In this document: in pieces, positions 30,545 to 44,232 of the stretch
Layout of the letters: every line of letters begins with the position of its first letter
Position numbering within the stretch: position 1 is the stretch's first letter
NCBI GenBank assembly: GCA_028826165.1
Contig: JAPDFW010000070.1
Location: 1,550,001-1,614,000, forward strand
Source: Anaeramoeba ignava BMAN
Lineage: Eukaryota > Protista > Anaeramoebae
Reading direction: 5' to 3'
DNA length: 64,000 nucleotides
The notes under the pieces: model-generated
The model's input: only the letters and a program-made list of their open reading frames with translations
Database searches by the model: none
What the model was told of the DNA's origin: nothing
Made by a program: the position numbers and the translations under genes

Positions 30545-32019
30545 ATGGAAACTTATTCAAATTTAGAAAAACTTTCAAATGATTTAAAAAATTTATTTCA
30601 AAATCAAAATGAAAATGAAAATGAAGAAGAAAGTTATTTTGATTTTGAAATAATTTGTGAACAAAATAAAACTTCATTTAAAACTCATAAATCAATTCTT
30701 TCTTCAAGAAGTGAATATTTTAAAACTCTTTTTAAATCTAAAATGAAAGAATATCAAGAAAATAAATTAATTTTAAAAGATGTTTCAAGTTCAATTCTAT
30801 TTTCAATTTTGAATTATTTTTATTCAGGAAAAATTAAAATTAATTTAGAAAATGCAATTCAAATTTTAATTTTTTCATCAAAATATTTAATTGATGATTT
30901 AATTCAAATTTGTTCAAAATTTTATCAAAAAGAATTTACAATTTGAAACTGTTATTGATGTTCTTAAATTATGTGAATCAATGAAAATAAATGAATTATT
31001 AGAATCTTGTTATAAATTTATTTTCAAAAATCTTGAAAAATTTATTAAAACTTCATTTTTTCTTGAACTTGAAGAAAATCATTTAAATTTAATATTATCA
31101 AATGATAATATTTTAATAAATGAATTTAAAATATTTCAATCAATAATAAAATGGGGAAAACATAAATCAAATATTAATCAAATAAAAGAAAATGAAAAAC
31201 TTGAAAAAGAAGAAAAAGAAAAAATTCAAGATCAAATTTCAAATATTATTCAAAAAATCAGATTTATTGATTTTTCTAAAAAAGAACTTACAGATACTTT
31301 GAAACAAAATTTAATTCCAAATCAAATTTCACAAAAATTAAATAATTTACTTAAATTAAAAACTAATAAAAACAAAAGAAATAAAAGAATTAATTGAAAA
31401 AGAAAAATCAAAATCAAACATTTTCAAAACAAGATTTCATTTTAAATCAACAATTATTAAAAAAGTTGAACATTACAATAAATTAAAAGAATGGATAAAT
31501 GATGATGAATTCTTTTCCAAAATGAAATTAAGATATTCAACAAAAATAGATGGATTTGATTGTAAAAAATGGCATGATAGATGTGATGATCAAGGAAAAA
31601 CATTAATTATTATCAAAACAAAAGATAATTTTATTTTTGGAGGATTTACTGAAGTTGGATTTTCAACTGATCGATCAGAATTGAGTGAAGAATATTCTTA
31701 TTATGAGGAAATATATATTAAAGATCCAAATGCATTTATTTTTTCATTAAGAAATGATAAAAACAATCGAAAACCAAAAAAATTCCCTATTAAGGAAGAT
31801 TATGGAGAAACTGCTCTCCATTATGAACCAGGTTGGGGTCCAGATTTTGGAGATGGAGATATTTCTTTAAATACTACATTAACATCAGGTACTTCCAAAT
31901 TTAGTTGTAGTTACAAATTGCCTAAAGGAATTAAATCTAGAACAAATGAAGCTAAAAGTTATTTAGCTGGTTCACCTGATAAATGGGAAGTTGATGAACT
32001 TGAAACTTATTTCATTTAA
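30545..32019 (+). CDS. BTB-BACK-TLDc protein, copy 3 (frameshifts near 30920 and 31375)
   Basis: Three ORF fragments colinear with copies 1, 2 and 4. Confidence 0.82.
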
Positions 32020-32137: not shown

Positions 32138-35100
32138 TCACCAATATTCTTCAAAAAGTCTTTGTTTTTGTCTTAAAACAGAAAGATCACCAAAAACACT
32201 TTCCAAAACTTTTCTAACATCTTTTCCCATTTGAATTGTTCCACATAAAAAAATATTTCCTTGATTTTGAGAAATATCTTTCAAACAATCAATATTGTCT
32301 TTCAAAACATGTTGAACATAAACTTTTTTGTTAGATTCTCTTGAAAAAGCAAATAAAGTTTTATCAATCAAATGATTTTCTTTCAATTCAAAAATTTCTT
32401 TTTTGAGCAAGAAATCATCATTTGAATTGCGACATCCATAGATGAAAACTAGGCTCTTGCGCTGAGAGTCTGGAACCAAGGTTCTCTCCATCAACATTCC
32501 ATAGAAAGGAGCAATACCTATTCCAGCTGCAATAAAAACTGAAGGAATTTTTGGATTGTATTTAAAAGTGGATTTCTGAAGAAAAATTGAAATTTTAGAT
32601 CCAATTTCTTTATGAGATAAATATCCTGAACAGAGACCATTTTGAACCACTCTAACCAGAATTCCCACACTCTCAGGATTACTATTAAAAGATGAAGCGA
32701 TGGAATACAAACGCGGCGCCATTCTGGGAAGAGAATTCACAAGCTCTTGGAATTCTATCTCGATACTGGGAAACTTCTTCAAAACGTCAATAATATTCAA
32801 TTTCTCTCTCATAATTTCTTTCTGATAAATTTCTTGGTTACTTTCATAAAGCAAGATTTTTTTCTTTTCTTTTTTGTTTTTGCAATACTGTGAGAGAATT
32901 AAAAGAGAATTCTGAGGAAGAATAGAAGAAATATCAACATATTTGGTCAGAAATTCTCCGATAGTGATTGTGTTTTGAAAACGAAGATCGTTTTTGATCA
33001 TGATTGGTTTCATTGGATCAATCTTTATTCTTTCACAGAGTTGGGTTACTAGTTTTGGATCGTTTTCTGGAAAGACACAAAGATGATCACCTGCTTCATA
33101 TTTCATAATTCGAGAATTTATTCTCATTTCCAAAAAATAAACGCTTCTTGGTTCATATGAGCGTTTTTTCCCAGATTGAGATAACTCCTTTTTCTGGATA
33201 ATCTCTGATATATAAGGGTTAGTGTGATCATAATACATTTTTTGATTGTTTTCGTTGACGAAGTTTTGAATAGGAACATTTTGATTTGATTCATCCATTT
33301 GAATTTCAAATTTATTTTGTGAAATATTTGAATTTTTGAGTTGATTTTCCTTGACAACTATTCCTTGGGATTCAACAATCTCTTTAATTAGATTTTTGCT
33401 CCAAGAGTTGAATGTATTCGAGGATGGGTTAGTTATATCAATTTCGTTGAGAGGAAGAATTTTTTCTGCTCCAAGTTTTTCAAATTGATGATCCAAAAAT
33501 CTACTAAATTTTTGGTAATTTTCTGAATATATTGAAGATCCAATTCCCAAGATGCTGTATTTGATTGATTCTAAAAGATGAGGAGTTTGGTTTGAGTTGA
33601 AACTTTGCAAATATTTCCATAAACGGTGAGCATTTTGAGGAGGTTCACCATTTCCATAAGTTGATGTCTTTTTTAAAAAAATTTGAATGAATTATTTTGA
33701 TTTCATTTGATTTCATTTGATTCATTTATAAAAAAATTGAGAAAAGAAATGAGATGAGTTTTTTAGCGAATAAATATTGAAAATGATATTGTATTTAAAG
33801 AATATTTAGATACCAAAATAATAACTATTGATTCTGAAGGTAAATTTTCAACAGAATAATTTTCCAGATCAATGACATTAATATCAAAAGAACTTTCCAC
33901 ATGAGGAGTGAGTCTAAAACGGAGTAATAATTGATGAGCAAGTTCTTCAGTGGTTCCAGTTTGTGTACCGAATAAAATGGCTATTCTATGTTCCTTATCA
34001 AAATGAGTGATAGAAAAAGTTGGATTTTGCCTTATGTCGAGGATATTTGAATTAGAATTAGTCTCATAAATGATATCTTTTATATCCTTTGGTCTTTCTA
34101 AATAGGGTTTTGGGAATTCGTCTGACCAAATGCCTTTAACTTCCGTGCCACAAAATTTACAACAACCTTTAGAAATGTTCATTTCTATTAAAACTCTTCT
34201 TTGTCTTTTCATGATCATTTTGTTACAATTTGGACAATAAGTTGAAGTATGTTTATCACTTCTAACATTTCCCAAATAAATGTGATTCAGGCCTTGTTTC
34301 TTCCCAATTTTGTAAGCTCTTTTTAGTGTTTCTAATGGTGTTCTTCCGTGGTTTTGCATCTTAAAATCGTCATGATATGCACTTACATTCCAAGGTATAT
34401 TTTTATCAATTCCATAAATAAATTTTGCGATATTTTCTAATTCTTCATCGCTATCATTTTCGTCTGGAATTACGAGTGTTGTCTTGAAAATGAATATAAA
34501 TATTTAAAATATAAATATAAATATTTAAAATATAAATATTTAAAATATAAATATTTAAAATATAAATATTTAAAATATAAATATTTAAAATATAAATATT
34601 TAAAATATAAATATAAATATTTAAAATATAAATATTTAAAATATAAATATAAATATTTAAAATATAAATATAAAATTCATTTCAAATTCTTCTTTTTTAA
34701 ATGTTTACAAGTTCAACCCAAACTCCTAATCTATACCATCTTTCAATATTTCTTAAAACTGGTGATAATCTTACACCAGATAAATTTTGATAAAATTCAT
34801 TTGTAAATGCTTTAAGATCAATATTAATTCCATCAATATATGGTGATAATAATTCAATTGTTTCAGGTGACATATATCCATTTGAAACCATAACATTTTT
34901 AATACCTTTTTTATGAGCCAATCTTAAAAAAGAAAATTGAATTGATTTAATTTAATTTAATTTAATTTAATTTAATTTAATTTGATTTGAATTAATTTGA
35001 TTTTAATTTTGATTTTAATTTTGATTTTAATTTTGATTTGATTTAATTTGAATTTAATTTGATTTTGATTTTGATTTTGAATTTAATTTAATTTGATTTG

Positions 35101-36129
35101 ATTTGATTTAATTTGATTTTAATTTGATTTGATTTGATTTAATTTGATTTTGATTTTGATTTAATTTGATTTGATTTGATTTGATTTGATTTGATTTGAT
35201 TTAATTTGATTTGATTTAATTTGATTTTGATTTTGATTTTATTTGATTTGATTTGATTTAATTTGATTTTAATTTTGATTTTGAATTTGATTTGAATTAA
35301 ATATTATTGAAGATTTTTATGATTTACTTTGCAGTATCATAAATATATTCAGCAAATATTGTTGGTTCCTGTTTTATTTGTGTTTTTTTTTTGAAAAATT
35401 AAAAATCGGAAAAAAATAATTTTTGAAATTAAATTTTACATTATAAGTATAAGCGATTGATTTGCAATTTTCTTTTATACAATTTTTCACAATTTGTTCT
35501 GGTGATAATTTTTTTCCAATATCCAAATCTTCAATATCAATTCCTTGTCTTGTGGCCATTGAAGTTTTCCAATTTTGACAAAAACTACAAGTAAAATTGC
35601 AACCTATTGAACCAATTGAATAAGCAAAACTTGAAGGATAAAAGTGCCTTAACTAATTTTGATTTTGAATTTTGATTTTGATTTTGATTTTAATATTTAT
35701 TTTGAATTTTGATTTTAATTTTGATTTTTATTTTGATTTTGATTTTGATTTTAATTTTGATTTTGATTTTGATTTTAATTTTAATTTTGATTTTGATTTT
35801 AATTTTGATTTTAATTTTGATTTTTGATTTTTGATTTTGATTTTGATTTTAATTATAATTTTAATTTTGATTTTAATTTTGATTTTAATTTTAATTTTAA
35901 TTTTAATTTTGATTTTGATTTTAATTTTGATTTTTACAGGTTTTTTTTCAATTGGATCAACATGAACAGATTTTCCATATCCATAAACTTCTAAAAATAA
36001 TTCACCATTTCTGTTTTTTCTAACTCCACATTCTCCTGTTTTTCCATTTGCAATTACACATCTTCTATAACAACAAGTGCATTTTACACTTTTATTATCA
36101 AGTTTTTCAAATAAAATTGCTTTGCTCAT
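32138..36129 (-). CDS. amrS: Fusion protein: AmmeMemoRadiSam-type radical SAM enzyme (AmrS) + flavodoxin + FAD/NADPH diflavin reductase, 6 exons, about 952 aa
   Basis: Exons 36129-35938, 35652-35440, 35368-35328, 34922-34709, 34482-33814 and 33667-32138 (all GT-AG; sum 2859 nt, in frame). AmrS motifs: CTCCYRRC..G.CGVR, DPIEKKP|LRHFYP, GCNFTCSFCQNW, AYTYN|EPT, SNGY, NIDLK, WVEL|TTLVIP..NDS, YLGNV, CPNC...CKFCG. Reductase motifs: FGTQTGTTEELA, TSTYGNGEPPQNA, GDHLCVFPEN, PRLYSIASS, GLCSGYL, AGIGIAPF, YGCR, FSR..KVYVQH, LCG...M, C-terminal EEYW. Confidence 0.93.
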
Positions 36130-36399: not shown

Positions 36400-37874
36400 A
36401 TGGAAACTTATTTAAATTTAAAAAAACTTTCAAATGATTTAAAAAATTTATTTCAAAATCAAAATCAAAATCAAAATGAAAAGAAAGTTATTTTGATTTT
36501 GAAATAATTTGTGAACAAAATAAAACTTCATTTAAAACTCATAAATCAATTCTTTCTTCAAGAAGTGAATATTTTAAAACACTTTTTAAATCTAAAATGA
36601 AAGAATATCAAGAAAATAAATTAATTTTAAAAGATGTTTCAAGTTCAATTCTATTTTCAATTTTGAATTATTTTTATTCAGGAAAAATTAAAATTAATTT
36701 AGAAAATGCAATTCAAATTTTAATTTTTTCATCAAAATATTTAATTGATGATTTAATTCAAATTTGTTCAAATTTTATCAAAAATAATTTACAATTTGAA
36801 ACTGTTATTGATGTTCTTAAATTATGTGAATCAATGAAAATAAATAAATTATTAGAATCTTGTTATAAATTTATTTTCAAAAATCTTGAAAAATTTATTA
36901 AAACTTCATTTTTTCTTGAACTTGAAGAAAATCATTTAAATTTAATATTATCAAATGATAATATTTTAATAAATGAATTTAAAATATTTCAATCAATAAT
37001 AAAATGGGGAAAACATAAATCAAATATTAATCAAATAAAAGAAAATGAAAAACTTGAAAAAGAAGAAAAAGAAAAAATTCAAGATCAAATTTCAAATATT
37101 ATTCAAAAAATCAGATTTATTGATTTCACAAAACAAGAACTTACAGATACTTTGAAACAAAATTTAATTCCAAATCAAATTTCACAAAAATTAAATAATT
37201 TACTTAAATTAAAAACTAATAAAAACAAGAAAGAAATAAAAGAATTAATTAAAAAAGAAAAATCAAAATCGAACATTTTCAAAACAAGATTTCATTTTAA
37301 ATCAACAATTATTAAAAAAGTTGAACATTACAATAAATTAAAAAAATGGATAAATGATGATGAATTCTTTTCCAATTTAATATTAGGATATTCAGCAAAA
37401 ATAGATGGATTTGATTGTAAAAAATGGCATGATAGATGTGATGATCAAGGAAAAACATTAATTATTATCAAAACAAAAGATAATTTTATTTTTGGAGGAT
37501 TTACTGAAGTTGGATTTTCAGCTGATCTTTCTGAATTGAGTGAAGAAGATTCTTATTATAAGGAAATATATATTAAAGATCCAAATGCATTTATTTTTTC
37601 ATTAAGAAATGATAAAAACAATCGAAAACCAAAAAAATTCCCTGTTAAGAAAGATTATGAAAAAACTGCTCTCCATTATGAACCAAATTGGGGTCCAATT
37701 TTTGGAGATGAAGATATTTCTTTAAATCGTACATTAACATCAGGTACTTCCGAATTGGGTTGGTTTTACAAATTGCCTAAAGGAATTAAATCTGGAACAA
37801 ATGAAGCTAAAAGTTATTTAGCTGGTTCACCTGATAAATGGGAAGTTGATGAACTTGAAACTTATTTCATTTAA
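36400..37874 (+). CDS. BTB-BACK-TLDc protein, copy 4 (frameshift near 36480)
   Basis: ATG GAA ACT TAT at 36400 as in paralogs; ORF 36597-37874 carries the rest. Confidence 0.87.
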
Positions 37875-40883: not shown

Positions 40884-42155
40884 TTAAATTTTAAGTTTTT
40901 TCAAAGTTAATTGAATTAAATTTCCACTATCTTTAGAAGGAACTTCTTGAATCATACAAGAATATTTCCAAGCAATAGAACCAAGATGAAAAGGAGGAAT
41001 ACTTGCAATTTTATCCTTTTCATCAAATTTAAAAATATGAGTATGACCAATTAAAATAAAATCATCATCTGTAATAAATCTTGAATAAAAATGTCTAAGA
41101 CCACAAATAAAAGGTTTAACTTCTGTACTTGTTAATTTATAATTATTTCCTCCATCATGTGACATAACTAGAGATTTAATTTGAGTTTGAATAAAATTTG
41201 TTGATTGAAAAACTCCTTGATTTTTGATTTGATTTTTGAAACTATTTTGATTTTGATTTTGATTTTGATTTTGATTTTCATTCTCATTTTGATTTTGATT
41301 TTGATTTTCATTTTCATTCTGATTTTGATTTTGATTTTCATTTTCATTTTCATTTTCATTTTCATTCTCATTTTCATTCTCATTTTGATTTTCATTTTGA
41401 TTTGTATTTCCAACTGAAATATTATTATGTGGAGTAATTTTCATAAAATAATGTTTTGTGATTTTAATAAATTTCTTTTGTTCTTTTGTTAATTTTTCTT
41501 TTATTCTTAAAACTTTTCTTCTATCATGATTTCCACCAATTATATAAGTTGGAAGTTGAAATTTTAAAAACTCATTCATAATATCAAGACAATAATTTAA
41601 ATCACTACAAGTTGAATGGAATAAATCACCCAAAATTATAATTTGATCTGGTTTTTCTTTTTGGATCATTTCTCCAAGAAATTTAAATGTTGCTGGAATT
41701 TTGGAAATAGGAAACCACGACTCTTCTACATTATTCAAATGCATATCAGCAATAACAAATGCATTCCATGGTTTATTTCCTTCAGTTTTGATTTCCTTCA
41801 TTGTGCCTTCATTGAAACGAAGATTCATGATTTTTCCTTCAATTTTTTTCGAACTCGATTTTTTCTTTGTTTTTTCTTCTGGTTTTTTTCTTGTTTCCTT
41901 TGATTCATGTTTTTTGGATTCTATAGATTTTTTTGCATTTGGTGGATTTGAATTTTTTCCTTTTGGAGGAGGAGGAATATTTGAGTTTGGAGGTGTACTT
42001 TTTTTTGGATTTGGTGGATTTGGAATTTTATTTTGTTCTTCCGTTTTATTTTGTTCAATGGATTGTTGTTTTTCTTCTTTTTCTTTTTTGCTAGATGAAT
42101 TTGTTTTATGAGAATGATGTTTTTTTTCTTTGTTTTTTGAATTATCTGAACCCAT
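40884..42155 (-). CDS. Calcineurin-like metallophosphoesterase, copy 1, predicted N-myristoylated
   Basis: Motifs DMH, GDLF, GNHD, SH and GHTH; N-terminus MGSDNS (MGxxxS) with a basic cluster. Confidence 0.85.
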   Translation of the reverse strand: MGSDNSKNKEKKHHSHKTNSSSKKEKEEKQQSIEQNKTEEQNKIPNPPNPKKSTPPNSNIPPPPKGKNSNPPNAKKSIESKKHESKETRKKPEEKTKKKSSSKKIEGKIMNLRFNEGTMKEIKTEGNKPWNAFVIADMHLNNVEESWFPISKIPATFKFLGEMIQKEKPDQIIILGDLFHSTCSDLNYCLDIMNEFLKFQLPTYIIGGNHDRRKVLRIKEKLTKEQKKFIKITKHYFMKITPHNNISVGNTNQNENQNENENENENENENENENQNQNQNENENQNQNQNENENQNQNQNQNQNSFKNQIKNQGVFQSTNFIQTQIKSLVMSHDGGNNYKLTSTEVKPFICGLRHFYSRFITDDDFILIGHTHIFKFDEKDKIASIPPFHLGSIAWKYSCMIQEVPSKDSGNLIQLTLKKLKI

Positions 42156-42908
42156 TTTTTAATCAAAAAATAAAAAATGAAAAATGAAAATTGATTTTGT
42201 TTGTTCATAAAAAAAATCACAAATAATATTTTGGATTTCTTATGAAATTTTTATTTTGAATTTGATTTTGAATTTTAATTTTGAATTTGATTTTGATTTT
42301 GATTTTGATTTTGATTTTGATTTTGATTTTGATTTTGATTTTGATTTTGATTTTGATTTTGATTATGATTTTGATTATTTTGAATTTGAATTTAATTTTG
42401 ATTTTGATTTTGATTTTGATTTTGATTTTGATTTTGATTTTGATTTTGATTTTGATTTTGATTTTAATTTTGATTTTAATTTTGAATTTGATTTTGATTT
42501 TGATTTTAATTTTGATTTTAATTTTGATTTTGATTTTGATTTTGATTTTGATTTTGATTTTGATTTTGATTTTGATTTTGATTTTGATTTTGATTTTAAT
42601 TTTGATTTTGATTTTTTTTAATTTTGATTTTGATTTTGATTTTGATTTTGATTTTGATTTTGATTTTTATTTTTGAATTTGAATTTAATTTTGATTTTGA
42701 TTTTGATTTTAATTTTGATTTTAATTTTGAATTTGATTTTGAATTTGAATTTGAATTTGATTTTGATTTTAATTTTAATTTTGAATTTGATTTTGAATTT
42801 GATTTTGATTTTGATTTTGATTTTGATTTTGATTTGAATTTGAATTTGATTTTGAATTTGGATTTTAATTTTAATTTTGAATTTTGATTTTGATTTTAAT
42901 TTTGATTA

Positions 42909-44232
42909 TTAAATTTTAAGTTTTTTCAAAGTTAATTGAATTAAATTTCCACTATCTTTAGAAGGAACTTCTTGAATCATACAAGAATATTTCCAAGCAA
43001 TAGAACCAAGATGAAAAGGAGGAATACTTGCAATTTTATCCTTTTCATCAAATTTAAAAAGATGAGTATGACCAATTAAAATAAAATCATCATCTGTAAT
43101 AAATCTTGAATAAAAATGTCTAAGACCACAAATAAAAGGTTTAACTTCTGTATTTTTTAATTTATAATTATTTCCTCCATCATGTGACATAACTAGAGAT
43201 TTAATTTGAGTTTGAATAAAATTTTGTTGATTGAAAAACTCTTTGATTTTTGATTTGATTTTTGAAACTATTTTGATTTTGATTTTGATTTTGATTTTGA
43301 TTTATATTTTGATTTTGATTTTGATTTTGATTTATATTTTGATTTTCATTTTGATTTTGATTTTGATTTTGATTTTGATTTTGATTTTGATTTTGATTTT
43401 GATTTTGATTTTGATTTTCATTTTCATTTTCATTTTCATTCTCATTTTGATTTTCATTTTGATTTGTATTTCCAACTGAAATATTATTATGTGGAGTAAT
43501 TTTCATAAAATAATGTTTTGTGATTTTAATAAATTTCTTTTGTTCTTTTGTTAATCTTTTTTTTATTCTTAAAACTTTTCTTCTATCATGATTTCCACCA
43601 ATTATATAAGTTGGGAGTTGAAATTTTAAAAACTCATTCATAATATCAAGACAATAATTTAAATCACTACAAGTTGAATGGAATAAATCACCCAAAATTA
43701 TAATTTGATCTGGTTTTTCTTTTTGGATCATTTCTCCAAGAAATTTAAATGTTGCTGGAATTTTGGAAATAGGAAACCACGACTCTTCTATATTATTCAA
43801 ATGCATATCAGTAATAACAAATGCATTCCATGGTTTATTTCCTTCAGTTTTGATTTCCTTCATTGTGCCTTCATTGAAACGAAGATTCATGATTTTTCCT
43901 TCAATTTTTTTCGAACTCGATTTTTTCTTTGTTTTTTCTTCTGGTTTTTTTCTTGTTTCCTTTGATTCATGTCTTTTGGAATGTTTGGATTTATTTTCAT
44001 TTGGTGGATTTGAATTTTTTCCTTTTGGAGGAGGAGAAATATTTGAGTTTGGAGGTGTACTTTTTTTTGGATTTGGTGAATTTGGAATTTTATTTTGTTC
44101 TTCCGTTTTATTTTGTTCAATGGATTGTTGTTTTTCTTCTTTTTCTTTTTTGCTAGATGAATTTTTTTTATGAGAATGATGTTTTTGATGTTTATGATGT
44201 TTATGATGTTTATGATGTTTTTCTGAATCCAT
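42909..44232 (-). CDS. Calcineurin-like metallophosphoesterase, copy 2 (frameshift near 43225)
   Basis: Near-identical tandem paralog split into ORFs 43201-44232 and 42909-43190 by one extra base in a T run. Confidence 0.8.

What the first reader, a model, noticed from the sequence alone, without database searches (positions are those of the whole stretch)
32138..36129. Eukaryotic AmrS radical SAM enzyme fused to a full diflavin (FMN/FAD/NADPH) reductase: a putative self-sufficient radical SAM system
Seen: six GT-AG exons splice in frame to about 952 aa, and the junctions rebuild conserved motifs exactly (PIEKKP|LRHF, YTYN|EPT, WVEL|TTLVIP, VIIL|TSTYGNGEPP). The N-terminal third is a complete AmmeMemoRadiSam radical SAM domain with CxxxCxxC plus N- and C-terminal Cys clusters. 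The radical SAM-to-flavodoxin junction lies inside one continuous exon (34482-33814), so the fusion does not depend on a guessed intron. The remainder has all cytochrome P450 reductase/NOS/MTRR/NDOR1-type motifs, including the terminal Trp. Known: radical SAM enzymes need a low-potential electron, usually from separate flavodoxin and flavodoxin reductase, and eukaryotic TYW1 fuses only a flavodoxin. AmrS is a bacterial/archaeal family of unknown substrate that travels with AMMECR1-like (AmrA) and MEMO1-like (AmrB) genes, which eukaryotes generally keep without AmrS. Inference: this anaerobe acquired AmrS and wired in its own NADPH to FAD to FMN to [4Fe-4S] chain, analogous to P450 BM3. It may run the complete AMMECR1/MEMO/AmrS pathway in a eukaryote. 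I know of no description of this architecture.
Basis: partly seen in the sequence, partly recalled or inferred. Interest (0 to 1): 0.95.

Follow-up and report, generated by a model that had tools for sequence, protein, structure and literature searches.

The report
Radical SAM enzyme with built-in reductase
An oxygen-avoiding amoeba (Anaeramoeba) has a real, spliced and transcribed gene that joins a radical-making enzyme of unknown job (AmrS) to a complete NADPH-driven electron supply, a design found in no paper searched, which gives a one-protein route to assay an orphan pathway whose other two genes (AMMECR1, MEMO1) humans keep.

Summary
Confirmed. The six GT-AG exons give 952 aa. The database protein KAJ5074596.1 (Anaeramoeba ignava) contains every exon, and a transcriptome-derived complete ORF matches it at 951/952. 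Residues 1-342 pass the AmrS model TIGR04337 (344 bits, cut-off 220); about 386-952 are a soluble CPR-type FMN/FAD/NADPH reductase with its cofactor motifs.

The fusion recurs in three more A. ignava genes (two with AmrS end and reductase in one unbroken exon; one has lost CX3CX2C) and in two A. flamelloides families. The scan found it before on those other contigs. Parabasalids carry AmrS-flavodoxin; Monocercomonoides, Kipferlia, Stygiella and Blastocystis carry AmrS without reductase, so AmrS is not a private acquisition. AMMECR1 (4) and MEMO1 (3) are co-expanded; control genes are single-copy.

Likely mechanism (inferred, untested): NADPH to FAD to FMN to [4Fe-4S], then SAM cleavage on an unknown substrate. 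No paper searched describes this architecture, but yeast TYW1 already runs weakly on NAD(P)H alone, and diflavin fusions are known in anaerobic protists. New variant of a known kind. No reads could be laid.

The parts
35938..36129 (-). Exon 1 (aa 1-64): AmrS N-terminal Cys cluster (C17, C19, C20, C24, C34) and DPIEKKP motif; no N-terminal extension relative to prokaryotic AmrS
   Evidence: (TIGR04337 4-61)
35653..35937 (-). Intron 1 (285 nt, GT-AG, hexamer microsatellite); same position in all four A. ignava paralogues
35440..35652 (-). Exon 2 (aa 65-135): radical SAM CX3CX2C (C82, C86, C89; about 35601-35578)
35369..35439 (-). Intron 2 (71 nt, GT-AG); position shared with the C88 paralogue
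35328..35368 (-). Exon 3 (41 nt, aa 136-149): completes the conserved YNEP motif
34923..35327 (-). Intron 3 (405 nt, GT-AG, phase 2, pentamer microsatellite); position shared with the C88 paralogue
34709..34922 (-). Exon 4 (aa 149-220): radical SAM core (SNGY and IDLK motifs)
34483..34708 (-). Intron 4 (226 nt, GT-AG, 4% GC); position shared with the C104 and C24 paralogues.
34117..34482 (-). Exon 5, first part (aa 221-342): AmrS C-terminal region with four-Cys site (C303, C306, C328, C331)
   Evidence: (TIGR04337 213-336)
33988..34116 (-). Exon 5, middle (aa 343-385): linker between AmrS and flavodoxin, partly disordered in the model (pLDDT under 50 at 363-372)
33814..33987 (-). Exon 5, last part (aa 386-443): first half of the FMN domain with the GTQTGT phosphate loop
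33668..33813 (-). Intron 5 (146 nt, GT-AG) inside the flavodoxin domain; absent from the C104 and C24 paralogues
32138..33667 (-). Exon 6 (aa 444-952 + stop): rest of flavodoxin (to about 33416), FAD_binding_1 (about 33229-32642), NAD_binding_1 (about 32536-32210), terminal E-x-W

Best explanation
One probably cytosolic protein: an intact AmrS (AmmeMemoRadiSam) radical SAM enzyme followed by a soluble cytochrome-P450-reductase-type diflavin reductase. Shown here: one spliced ORF, both halves with their motifs, kept across two species. Inferred from how CPR, NOS and radical SAM enzymes work: NADPH gives a hydride to FAD; FAD passes single electrons to FMN; the FMN domain swings out and reduces the SAM-bound [4Fe-4S]2+ cluster, in cis or across a dimer; SAM is cleaved to the 5'-deoxyadenosyl radical, which acts on AmrS's unknown substrate. 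The CPR-length FMN loop (STYGNGEPP) suggests the FMN hydroquinone is the donor. The reaction most likely belongs to the pathway shared with AMMECR1 and MEMO1 (about 55%); Balaji and Aravind proposed an RNA base modification for it. History (inferred): AmrS-flavodoxin or the full fusion arose around the Anaeramoeba-Parabasalia ancestor, from a host diflavin reductase.
For: Transcript-type ORF covers all junctions. Transcript-type ORFs also exist for the other three paralogues. C104 and C24 carry AmrS residue 221 to the terminal Trp in one exon. Two families in A. flamelloides. CX3CX2C, FMN loops, R-x-Y-S-I FAD motif, S885/R886/K891/Y893 NADPH site, C918 and E950-x-W952 all present. Model pLDDT 89.8; reductase part matches human CPR at TM 0.83 by target. 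Four of the five FAD_binding_1 genes detected in the genome are AmrS fusions. AMMECR1 x4 and MEMO1 x3 against TYW1, TYW3 and an Elp3-type gene x1 each and Dph1/Dph2 x2. AmrS is fused to Memo or AMMECR1 in many prokaryotes. A fused flavodoxin supports TYW1 turnover from NAD(P)H (PMC8941971). Some bacterial AmrS are fused to FMN_bind and Fer4_5 domains.
Against: No biochemistry. [quoted passage not shown] The model was not examined for an FMN-to-cluster contact. AMMECR1 and MEMO1 are unlinked to the fusion genes, and many eukaryotes keep them without AmrS (own knowledge); copy counts are lower bounds. The window copy has Asn at a nearly invariant His (252) and Ile for Thr in GTG (826). One paralogue keeps the reductase but has lost CX3CX2C, so the fusion can persist without radical chemistry. 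Tree supports are moderate and composition is biased.
Confidence: 0.7

Rival explanations
1. The reductase serves mainly another acceptor: a downstream step of the same pathway (for example the MEMO1 metal centre), cluster assembly or repair on AmrS, or oxygen scavenging. The catalytic electron then comes from ferredoxin or another low-potential carrier.
For: NADPH to cluster is uphill (own knowledge). Metamonads studied lack Tah18/Dre2 (PMC6006210). The C88 paralogue keeps the reductase without CX3CX2C. The genome has other flavodoxin-bearing redox proteins.
Against: Parabasalid-type homologues keep only the flavodoxin, the classic radical SAM donor, fused at the same end. TYW1 is a precedent for direct use of the fused FMN domain.
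Confidence: 0.17
2. The reductase does feed the cluster, but AmrS acts on a protein, PFL-activase style (puts a radical on, or modifies, a residue of a partner, possibly AMMECR1 with its conserved RGCIG motif), not on RNA or a metabolite. This concerns the substrate and is compatible with self-reduction.
For: The nearest solved fold to the AmrS model is PFL activating enzyme (Z 24.4, rmsd 2.4 A over 226 residues; next NifB 18.0). All four AMMECR1 copies keep RGCIG.
Against: Identity to PFL-AE is only 20-22%. Activase models score far under their cut-offs. A shared fold shows no function. Prokaryotic neighbours other than Memo/AMMECR1 give no consistent hint.
Confidence: 0.2
3. The family is real, but this window's copy is a diverging, weakly active or regulatory paralogue.
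For: H252N and T826I substitutions; longest branch of the three intact A. ignava copies. A sister paralogue is already degenerate.
Against: All cluster and cofactor motifs are kept, TIGR04337 score is 344 against 349-355 for the others, and it has a full-length transcript-type ORF.
Confidence: 0.1
4. Artefact: two neighbouring genes joined by the gene model, a mis-assembly, or bacterial contamination.
For: No raw reads could be laid.
Against: Junction inside one exon; same fusion at four loci and in a second species; transcript-type ORFs; spliceosomal introns; eukaryotic flanking genes (BTB-BACK-TLDc, NLE-WD40).
Confidence: 0.01

Closest known systems
AmrS, AmmeMemoRadiSam system radical SAM enzyme (TIGR04337)
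   Same: Whole domain over the cut-off; N-terminal Cys cluster, DPIEKKP, CX3CX2C, YNEP, C-terminal four-Cys site; 40-52% identity to prokaryotic members.
   Different: Eukaryotic, with introns; not linked to AmrA/AmrB genes; C-terminally fused to a diflavin reductase. Prokaryotic fusions seen were to Memo, AMMECR1, inteins or FMN_bind/Fer4.
Eukaryotic TYW1 (flavodoxin-radical SAM; PMC8941971)
   Same: [quoted passage not shown] Nearest cluster by language-model features (0.75, a lead only).
   Different: TYW1 has an N-terminal flavodoxin only, with no FAD/NADPH module, and a different radical SAM family. A. ignava has its own separate TYW1.
NADPH-cytochrome P450 reductase and diflavin fusions (P450 BM3, NOS)
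   Same: FMN, connecting, FAD and NADPH domains; top PDB matches by sequence (E 5e-60) and structure (TM 0.83 by target) are CPRs; same self-contained design as BM3 and NOS.
   Different: No membrane anchor; acceptor is a [4Fe-4S] radical SAM domain, not heme. In trees the fused reductases form their own clade, apart from NDOR1, MTRR, CysJ and BM3, beside Anaeramoeba's stand-alone reductase (SH-aLRT 95 and 89).
PNO and [FeFe]-hydrogenase-CysJ fusions of anaerobic protists (PMC4989108, PMC10703272)
   Same: A diflavin or flavodoxin module fused C-terminally to an Fe-S enzyme in an anaerobic protist; A. ignava itself has hydrogenase-flavodoxin fusions.
   Different: Those serve energy metabolism; their flavodoxins form a separate group from the AmrS-fused ones.
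Parabasalid AmrS-flavodoxin (Tritrichomonas foetus OHT01850.1, OHS93219.1)
   Same: Same AmrS with flavodoxin at the same end; all flavodoxin-bearing AmrS group together in the careful tree (81/82, unstarred).
   Different: Stops after the flavodoxin. UniRef labels these as TYW1, but the one tested (OHT01850.1) passes TIGR04337 (304 bits).

Membership tests
AmrS (TIGR04337) | Whole-protein score over the curated cut-off (220 bits) | tested here: met
   343.9 bits, residues 7-342 against model 4-336
AmrS (TIGR04337) | CX3CX2C plus the family's conserved Cys sites and motifs | tested here: met
   His252 is Asn in this copy
AmrS (TIGR04337) | Genome also encodes AmrA (AMMECR1) and AmrB (MEMO1) partners | tested here: met
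   4 AMMECR1 and 3 Memo genes
AmrS (TIGR04337) | Adjacent to or fused with AmrA/AmrB | tested here: not met
   Partners are on other contigs or over 1 Mb away; expected in a eukaryote, and only 14 of 146 immediate neighbours of prokaryotic AmrS were Memo or AMMECR1
Radical SAM superfamily | Reductive SAM cleavage by a [4Fe-4S]1+ cluster | not testable with these tools
   needs biochemistry
Glycyl-radical enzyme activases (PflA and kin) | Score over an activase cut-off | tested here: not met
   best 67.8 bits against 250.2 for YjjW; fold is nonetheless closest to PFL-AE
TYW1 | Wyosine_form domain and N-terminal flavodoxin | tested here: not met
   no PF08608; the true TYW1 is on C100
Diflavin reductases (CPR/NOS/MTRR/NDOR1/CysJ) | Flavodoxin_1, FAD_binding_1, NAD_binding_1 in order, each over its cut-off | tested here: met
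   88.6, 127.7 and 52.9 bits
Diflavin reductases (CPR/NOS/MTRR/NDOR1/CysJ) | Ser/Cys/acid triad, terminal aromatic, 2'-phosphate residues | tested here: met
   S765, C918, E950 (Glu where CPR has Asp), W952; S885, R886, K891, Y893
Diflavin reductases (CPR/NOS/MTRR/NDOR1/CysJ) | Binds FMN and FAD and passes electrons from NADPH | not testable with these tools
   needs biochemistry
Microsomal CPR proper | N-terminal membrane anchor | tested here: not met
   AmrS takes its place; highest 19-residue hydropathy is 1.71, in the NADPH-domain strand
NDOR1/Tah18, MTRR or CysJ orthologue | Groups with that clade or passes its cut-off | tested here: not met
   separate clade; CysJ 269 against 668 bits

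The most novel reading that the evidence does not exclude
This is the first natural radical SAM enzyme wired to a complete NADPH-FAD-FMN chain, turning over efficiently with only NADPH and SAM, and it is the missing oxygen-sensitive step of an AMMECR1/MEMO1 pathway that anaerobic eukaryotes still run in full. Its product would name the chemistry behind two conserved human proteins.
Probability: 0.35. Interest if true: 0.9.

Novelty: new variant of a known kind. Interest (0 to 1): 0.72.

Why it matters
The physiological electron donors of radical SAM enzymes are called underexplored in PMC9204691, and the AmmeMemoRadiSam pathway has no known substrate in the papers searched. A protein that carries its cognate reductant removes dithionite artefacts and donor mismatch, so uncoupled SAM cleavage and substrate fishing become one-protein assays. 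The natural series AmrS alone (Stygiella, Blastocystis, Kipferlia), AmrS-flavodoxin (Tritrichomonas), AmrS-full reductase (Anaeramoeba) and a cluster-less paralogue supplies built-in controls. The co-expansion of AmrS, AMMECR1 and MEMO1 in one eukaryote hints that the three still act together. The design could also guide self-reducing radical SAM biocatalysts. Public annotation hides these genes as 'flavodoxin family protein', 'nitric oxide synthase-related' or TYW1.

Tried and rejected
Run X3 holds 0.70 of the words and exon-only words are 0.63, but DNA runs hold 0.67-0.84, so this does not discriminate and was not used.

The joined model was never assembled or typed: it was searched exon by exon by reference. 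Full-length work used database records returned by the tools (P0003, P0001, P0017).

Rejected: activase identity; TYW1 identity; NDOR1, CysJ or BM3 origin of the reductase; contamination; a fusion of the stand-alone C113 reductase to the actin-like ORF before it (a stop and a new start separate them).

Inconclusive: prokaryotic donor of AmrS (none resolved); single eukaryotic origin (not in the best tree, not rejected, p-AU 0.40); whether the parabasalid flavodoxin is a truncated fused reductase (support 55, long branches); prokaryotic neighbours. ESM Atlas showed no cluster with this architecture, but covers only clusters of 50 or more. Stand-alone 340-aa AmrS were not surveyed exhaustively, so restriction to anaerobes is not shown.
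Full report
Verdict. The gene is a real fusion of an intact AmrS radical SAM enzyme to a complete diflavin reductase in Anaeramoeba ignava. I found no description of this architecture in the papers I could search. The mechanism is inferred, not shown.

Gene model. The six exons total 2859 nt, 952 codons plus stop. All five introns are GT-AG and very AT-rich, and each brings an in-frame stop if retained. Searched one by one, exons 1, 2, 4 and 5 match consecutive parts of TIGR04337. Exon 5 runs from the AmrS C-terminus into flavodoxin in one frame, and exon 6 holds the rest of the flavodoxin and the FAD and NADPH domains.

Source and expression. The homologue search returned P0003 (KAJ5074596.1, 'flavodoxin family protein', A. 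ignava, 952 aa), which contains every exon translation in order. Its cluster also holds P0017, a complete EukProt ORF whose name (c20063_g1_i2, 'ORF type:complete') is that of a transcriptome contig. It is 951/952 identical with no gaps. I take this as transcript support for all five junctions and for one mRNA; that it derives from RNA is read from the record name. Flanking genes are eukaryotic.

N-terminal domain. P0003 scores 344 bits on TIGR04337 (cut-off 220) and 68 on the best activase model. It keeps the N-terminal Cys cluster, DPIEKKP, CX3CX2C, YNEP, IDLK and the C-terminal four-Cys site. One nearly invariant His (252) is Asn here. The domain model is confident (pLDDT 96.8). Its nearest solved fold is PFL activating enzyme (Z 24.4, rmsd 2.4 A, 22% identity), well ahead of NifB at 18.0. 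No AmrS was found among solved structures.

C-terminal module. Flavodoxin_1, FAD_binding_1 and NAD_binding_1 each pass their cut-offs. The best PDB matches are mammalian CPRs by sequence and structure. The FMN loops, FAD motif, Ser/Cys/acid triad, NADPH 2'-phosphate residues and terminal Trp are present; Thr of the GTG loop is Ile in this copy; there is no membrane anchor. The full-length model has pLDDT 89.8 and pTM 0.77, with a partly disordered linker.

Paralogues and relatives. The genome has four such genes, on C60, C104, C24 and C88. In C104 and C24 one exon runs from AmrS residue 221 to the terminal Trp, so the fusion needs no splice there. All four share the first intron position, and each has a transcript-type ORF. 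The C88 copy has lost CX3CX2C, DPIEKKP and IDLK but keeps its reductase. A. flamelloides has two families of the full fusion. Tritrichomonas foetus, several metagenomic eukaryote contigs and one Logan contig (DRR658064) have AmrS plus flavodoxin only. Stygiella, Blastocystis, Monocercomonoides and Kipferlia have AmrS with no reductase. No full fusion was found outside Anaeramoeba among 418 long AmrS proteins (best 120 shown), the best 150 of the exon-5 search or the best 120 reductase hits. These searches are not exhaustive.

Origin. In the careful AmrS tree the five intact Anaeramoeba domains are one clade (99/95), and all flavodoxin-bearing AmrS group together without firm support (81/82). 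One origin for all eukaryotic AmrS is neither recovered nor rejected (p-AU 0.40), and no donor is resolved. The fused reductases form one clade (100) beside Anaeramoeba's stand-alone soluble reductase (SH-aLRT 95 under LG, 89 under the mixture model). Composition bias could inflate that pairing. The simplest reading: AmrS is old in metamonads and was fused to a copy of a host reductase. Whether parabasalids lost the FAD/NADPH part or never had it is open.

Partners. The genome has four AMMECR1 and three MEMO1 genes, unlinked to the fusions. Controls are single-copy: TYW1, TYW3, an Elp3-type gene, and the Dph1/Dph2 pair. In prokaryotes AmrS is often fused to Memo or AMMECR1. The parallel expansion is circumstantial support for a shared pathway; the counts are lower bounds.

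Mechanism. Shown: domain order, motifs, conservation, one ORF. From established enzymology: diflavin reductases turn an NADPH hydride into single electrons delivered by a mobile FMN domain, and radical SAM enzymes need a one-electron-reduced cluster. Inferred, about 0.7: the FMN domain reduces the AmrS cluster, in cis or in trans. The step is uphill, so a different acceptor is a live rival (about 0.17). The substrate is unknown. An RNA base modification was proposed for this gene trio (PMC2034487); the PFL-activase-like fold keeps a protein substrate in play (about 0.2).

What is known. [quoted passage not shown] CysJ/CPR-like modules fused to hydrogenase and PFO are known in anaerobic protists (PMC4989108, PMC10703272). 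The Anaeramoeba genome paper's main text does not mention this gene, and searches on the family name, its model number and the architecture found nothing on it. The library lacks most subscription journals. I class it as a new variant of a known kind. The scan's own notes record the same fusion on the three other contigs; I saw them only after reaching these conclusions, and they are not independent evidence.

Scores. Interest 0.72. Fusion real: about 0.99. Self-reduction: about 0.7. Works with AMMECR1/MEMO1: about 0.55. Most novel case: probability 0.35, interest 0.9.

Noticed in passing
G000:C88 (L019:1102-6935; P0135/KAJ5071532.1): Expressed paralogue with CX3CX2C changed to RX3CX5C, DPIEKKP and IDLK lost and a short tail after the terminal Trp, but an otherwise intact reductase and both other Cys sites: a probable pseudo-enzyme, annotated 'nitric oxide synthase-related'.
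   Followed up: partly
P0007, P0026 (Tritrichomonas foetus); P0024, P0025, P0028, P0140: AmrS-flavodoxin fusions; UniRef labels the T. foetus ones as TYW1, though P0007 passes TIGR04337. P0007 starts with a short extension (MLSFFKK) and Stygiella AmrS P0008 has a long one; either might be an organelle-targeting signal or a mis-called start.
   Followed up: partly
L026 (Logan DRR658064, 1795 nt): AmrS-flavodoxin from an unidentified organism; branches next to Anaeramoeba (87/89) yet ends after the flavodoxin.
   Followed up: partly
P0047, P0056, P0076 (L126:4001-6310): Bacterial AmrS fused N-terminally to FMN_bind, in one case also to Fer4_5 domains: possibly an independent way of wiring electrons to AmrS.
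   Followed up: partly
P0004-P0006, P0022, P0023 and others: Many prokaryotic AmrS carry an intein with a LAGLIDADG endonuclease; none was seen in the Anaeramoeba copies despite that genus's many inteins.
   Followed up: no
L113, L114, L116, L117 (G000 C138, C1, C127, C104): Four [FeFe]-hydrogenase-flavodoxin fusions in the same genome; no FAD_binding_1 match at those loci.
   Followed up: partly
L021/L025 (G000:C113, about 64100-66300): The only stand-alone diflavin reductase detected: soluble, no anchor, not grouping with NDOR1. It lies about 100 nt after an actin-like ORF on the same strand.
   Followed up: partly
L121, L123, L124 (G000 C75, C64): Long flavodiiron-type proteins (466 to about 900 aa) with extra C-terminal domains, two in tandem on C64; identity judged by eye only.
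   Followed up: no
G000:C80:152064-155098: Two Diphthamide_syn genes (Dph1/Dph2) are adjacent and convergent.
   Followed up: no
window 30545-32019 (+) and 36597-37874 (+): The fusion gene sits between two BTB-BACK-TLDc genes, in a window rich in BTB and RCC1-BTB genes.
   Followed up: partly
window 40884-44232 (-): Two tandem calcineurin-like phosphoesterase genes.
   Followed up: no
L017:6915-7292 (-): A small intronless ORF (125 aa) that looks by eye like a bacterial VOC/glyoxalase protein lies just upstream of the C104 paralogue.
   Followed up: no
P0020 (Monocercomonoides exilis): AmrS at the C-terminus of a 933-aa model with about 580 low-complexity residues before it; possibly a merged gene model.
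   Followed up: no
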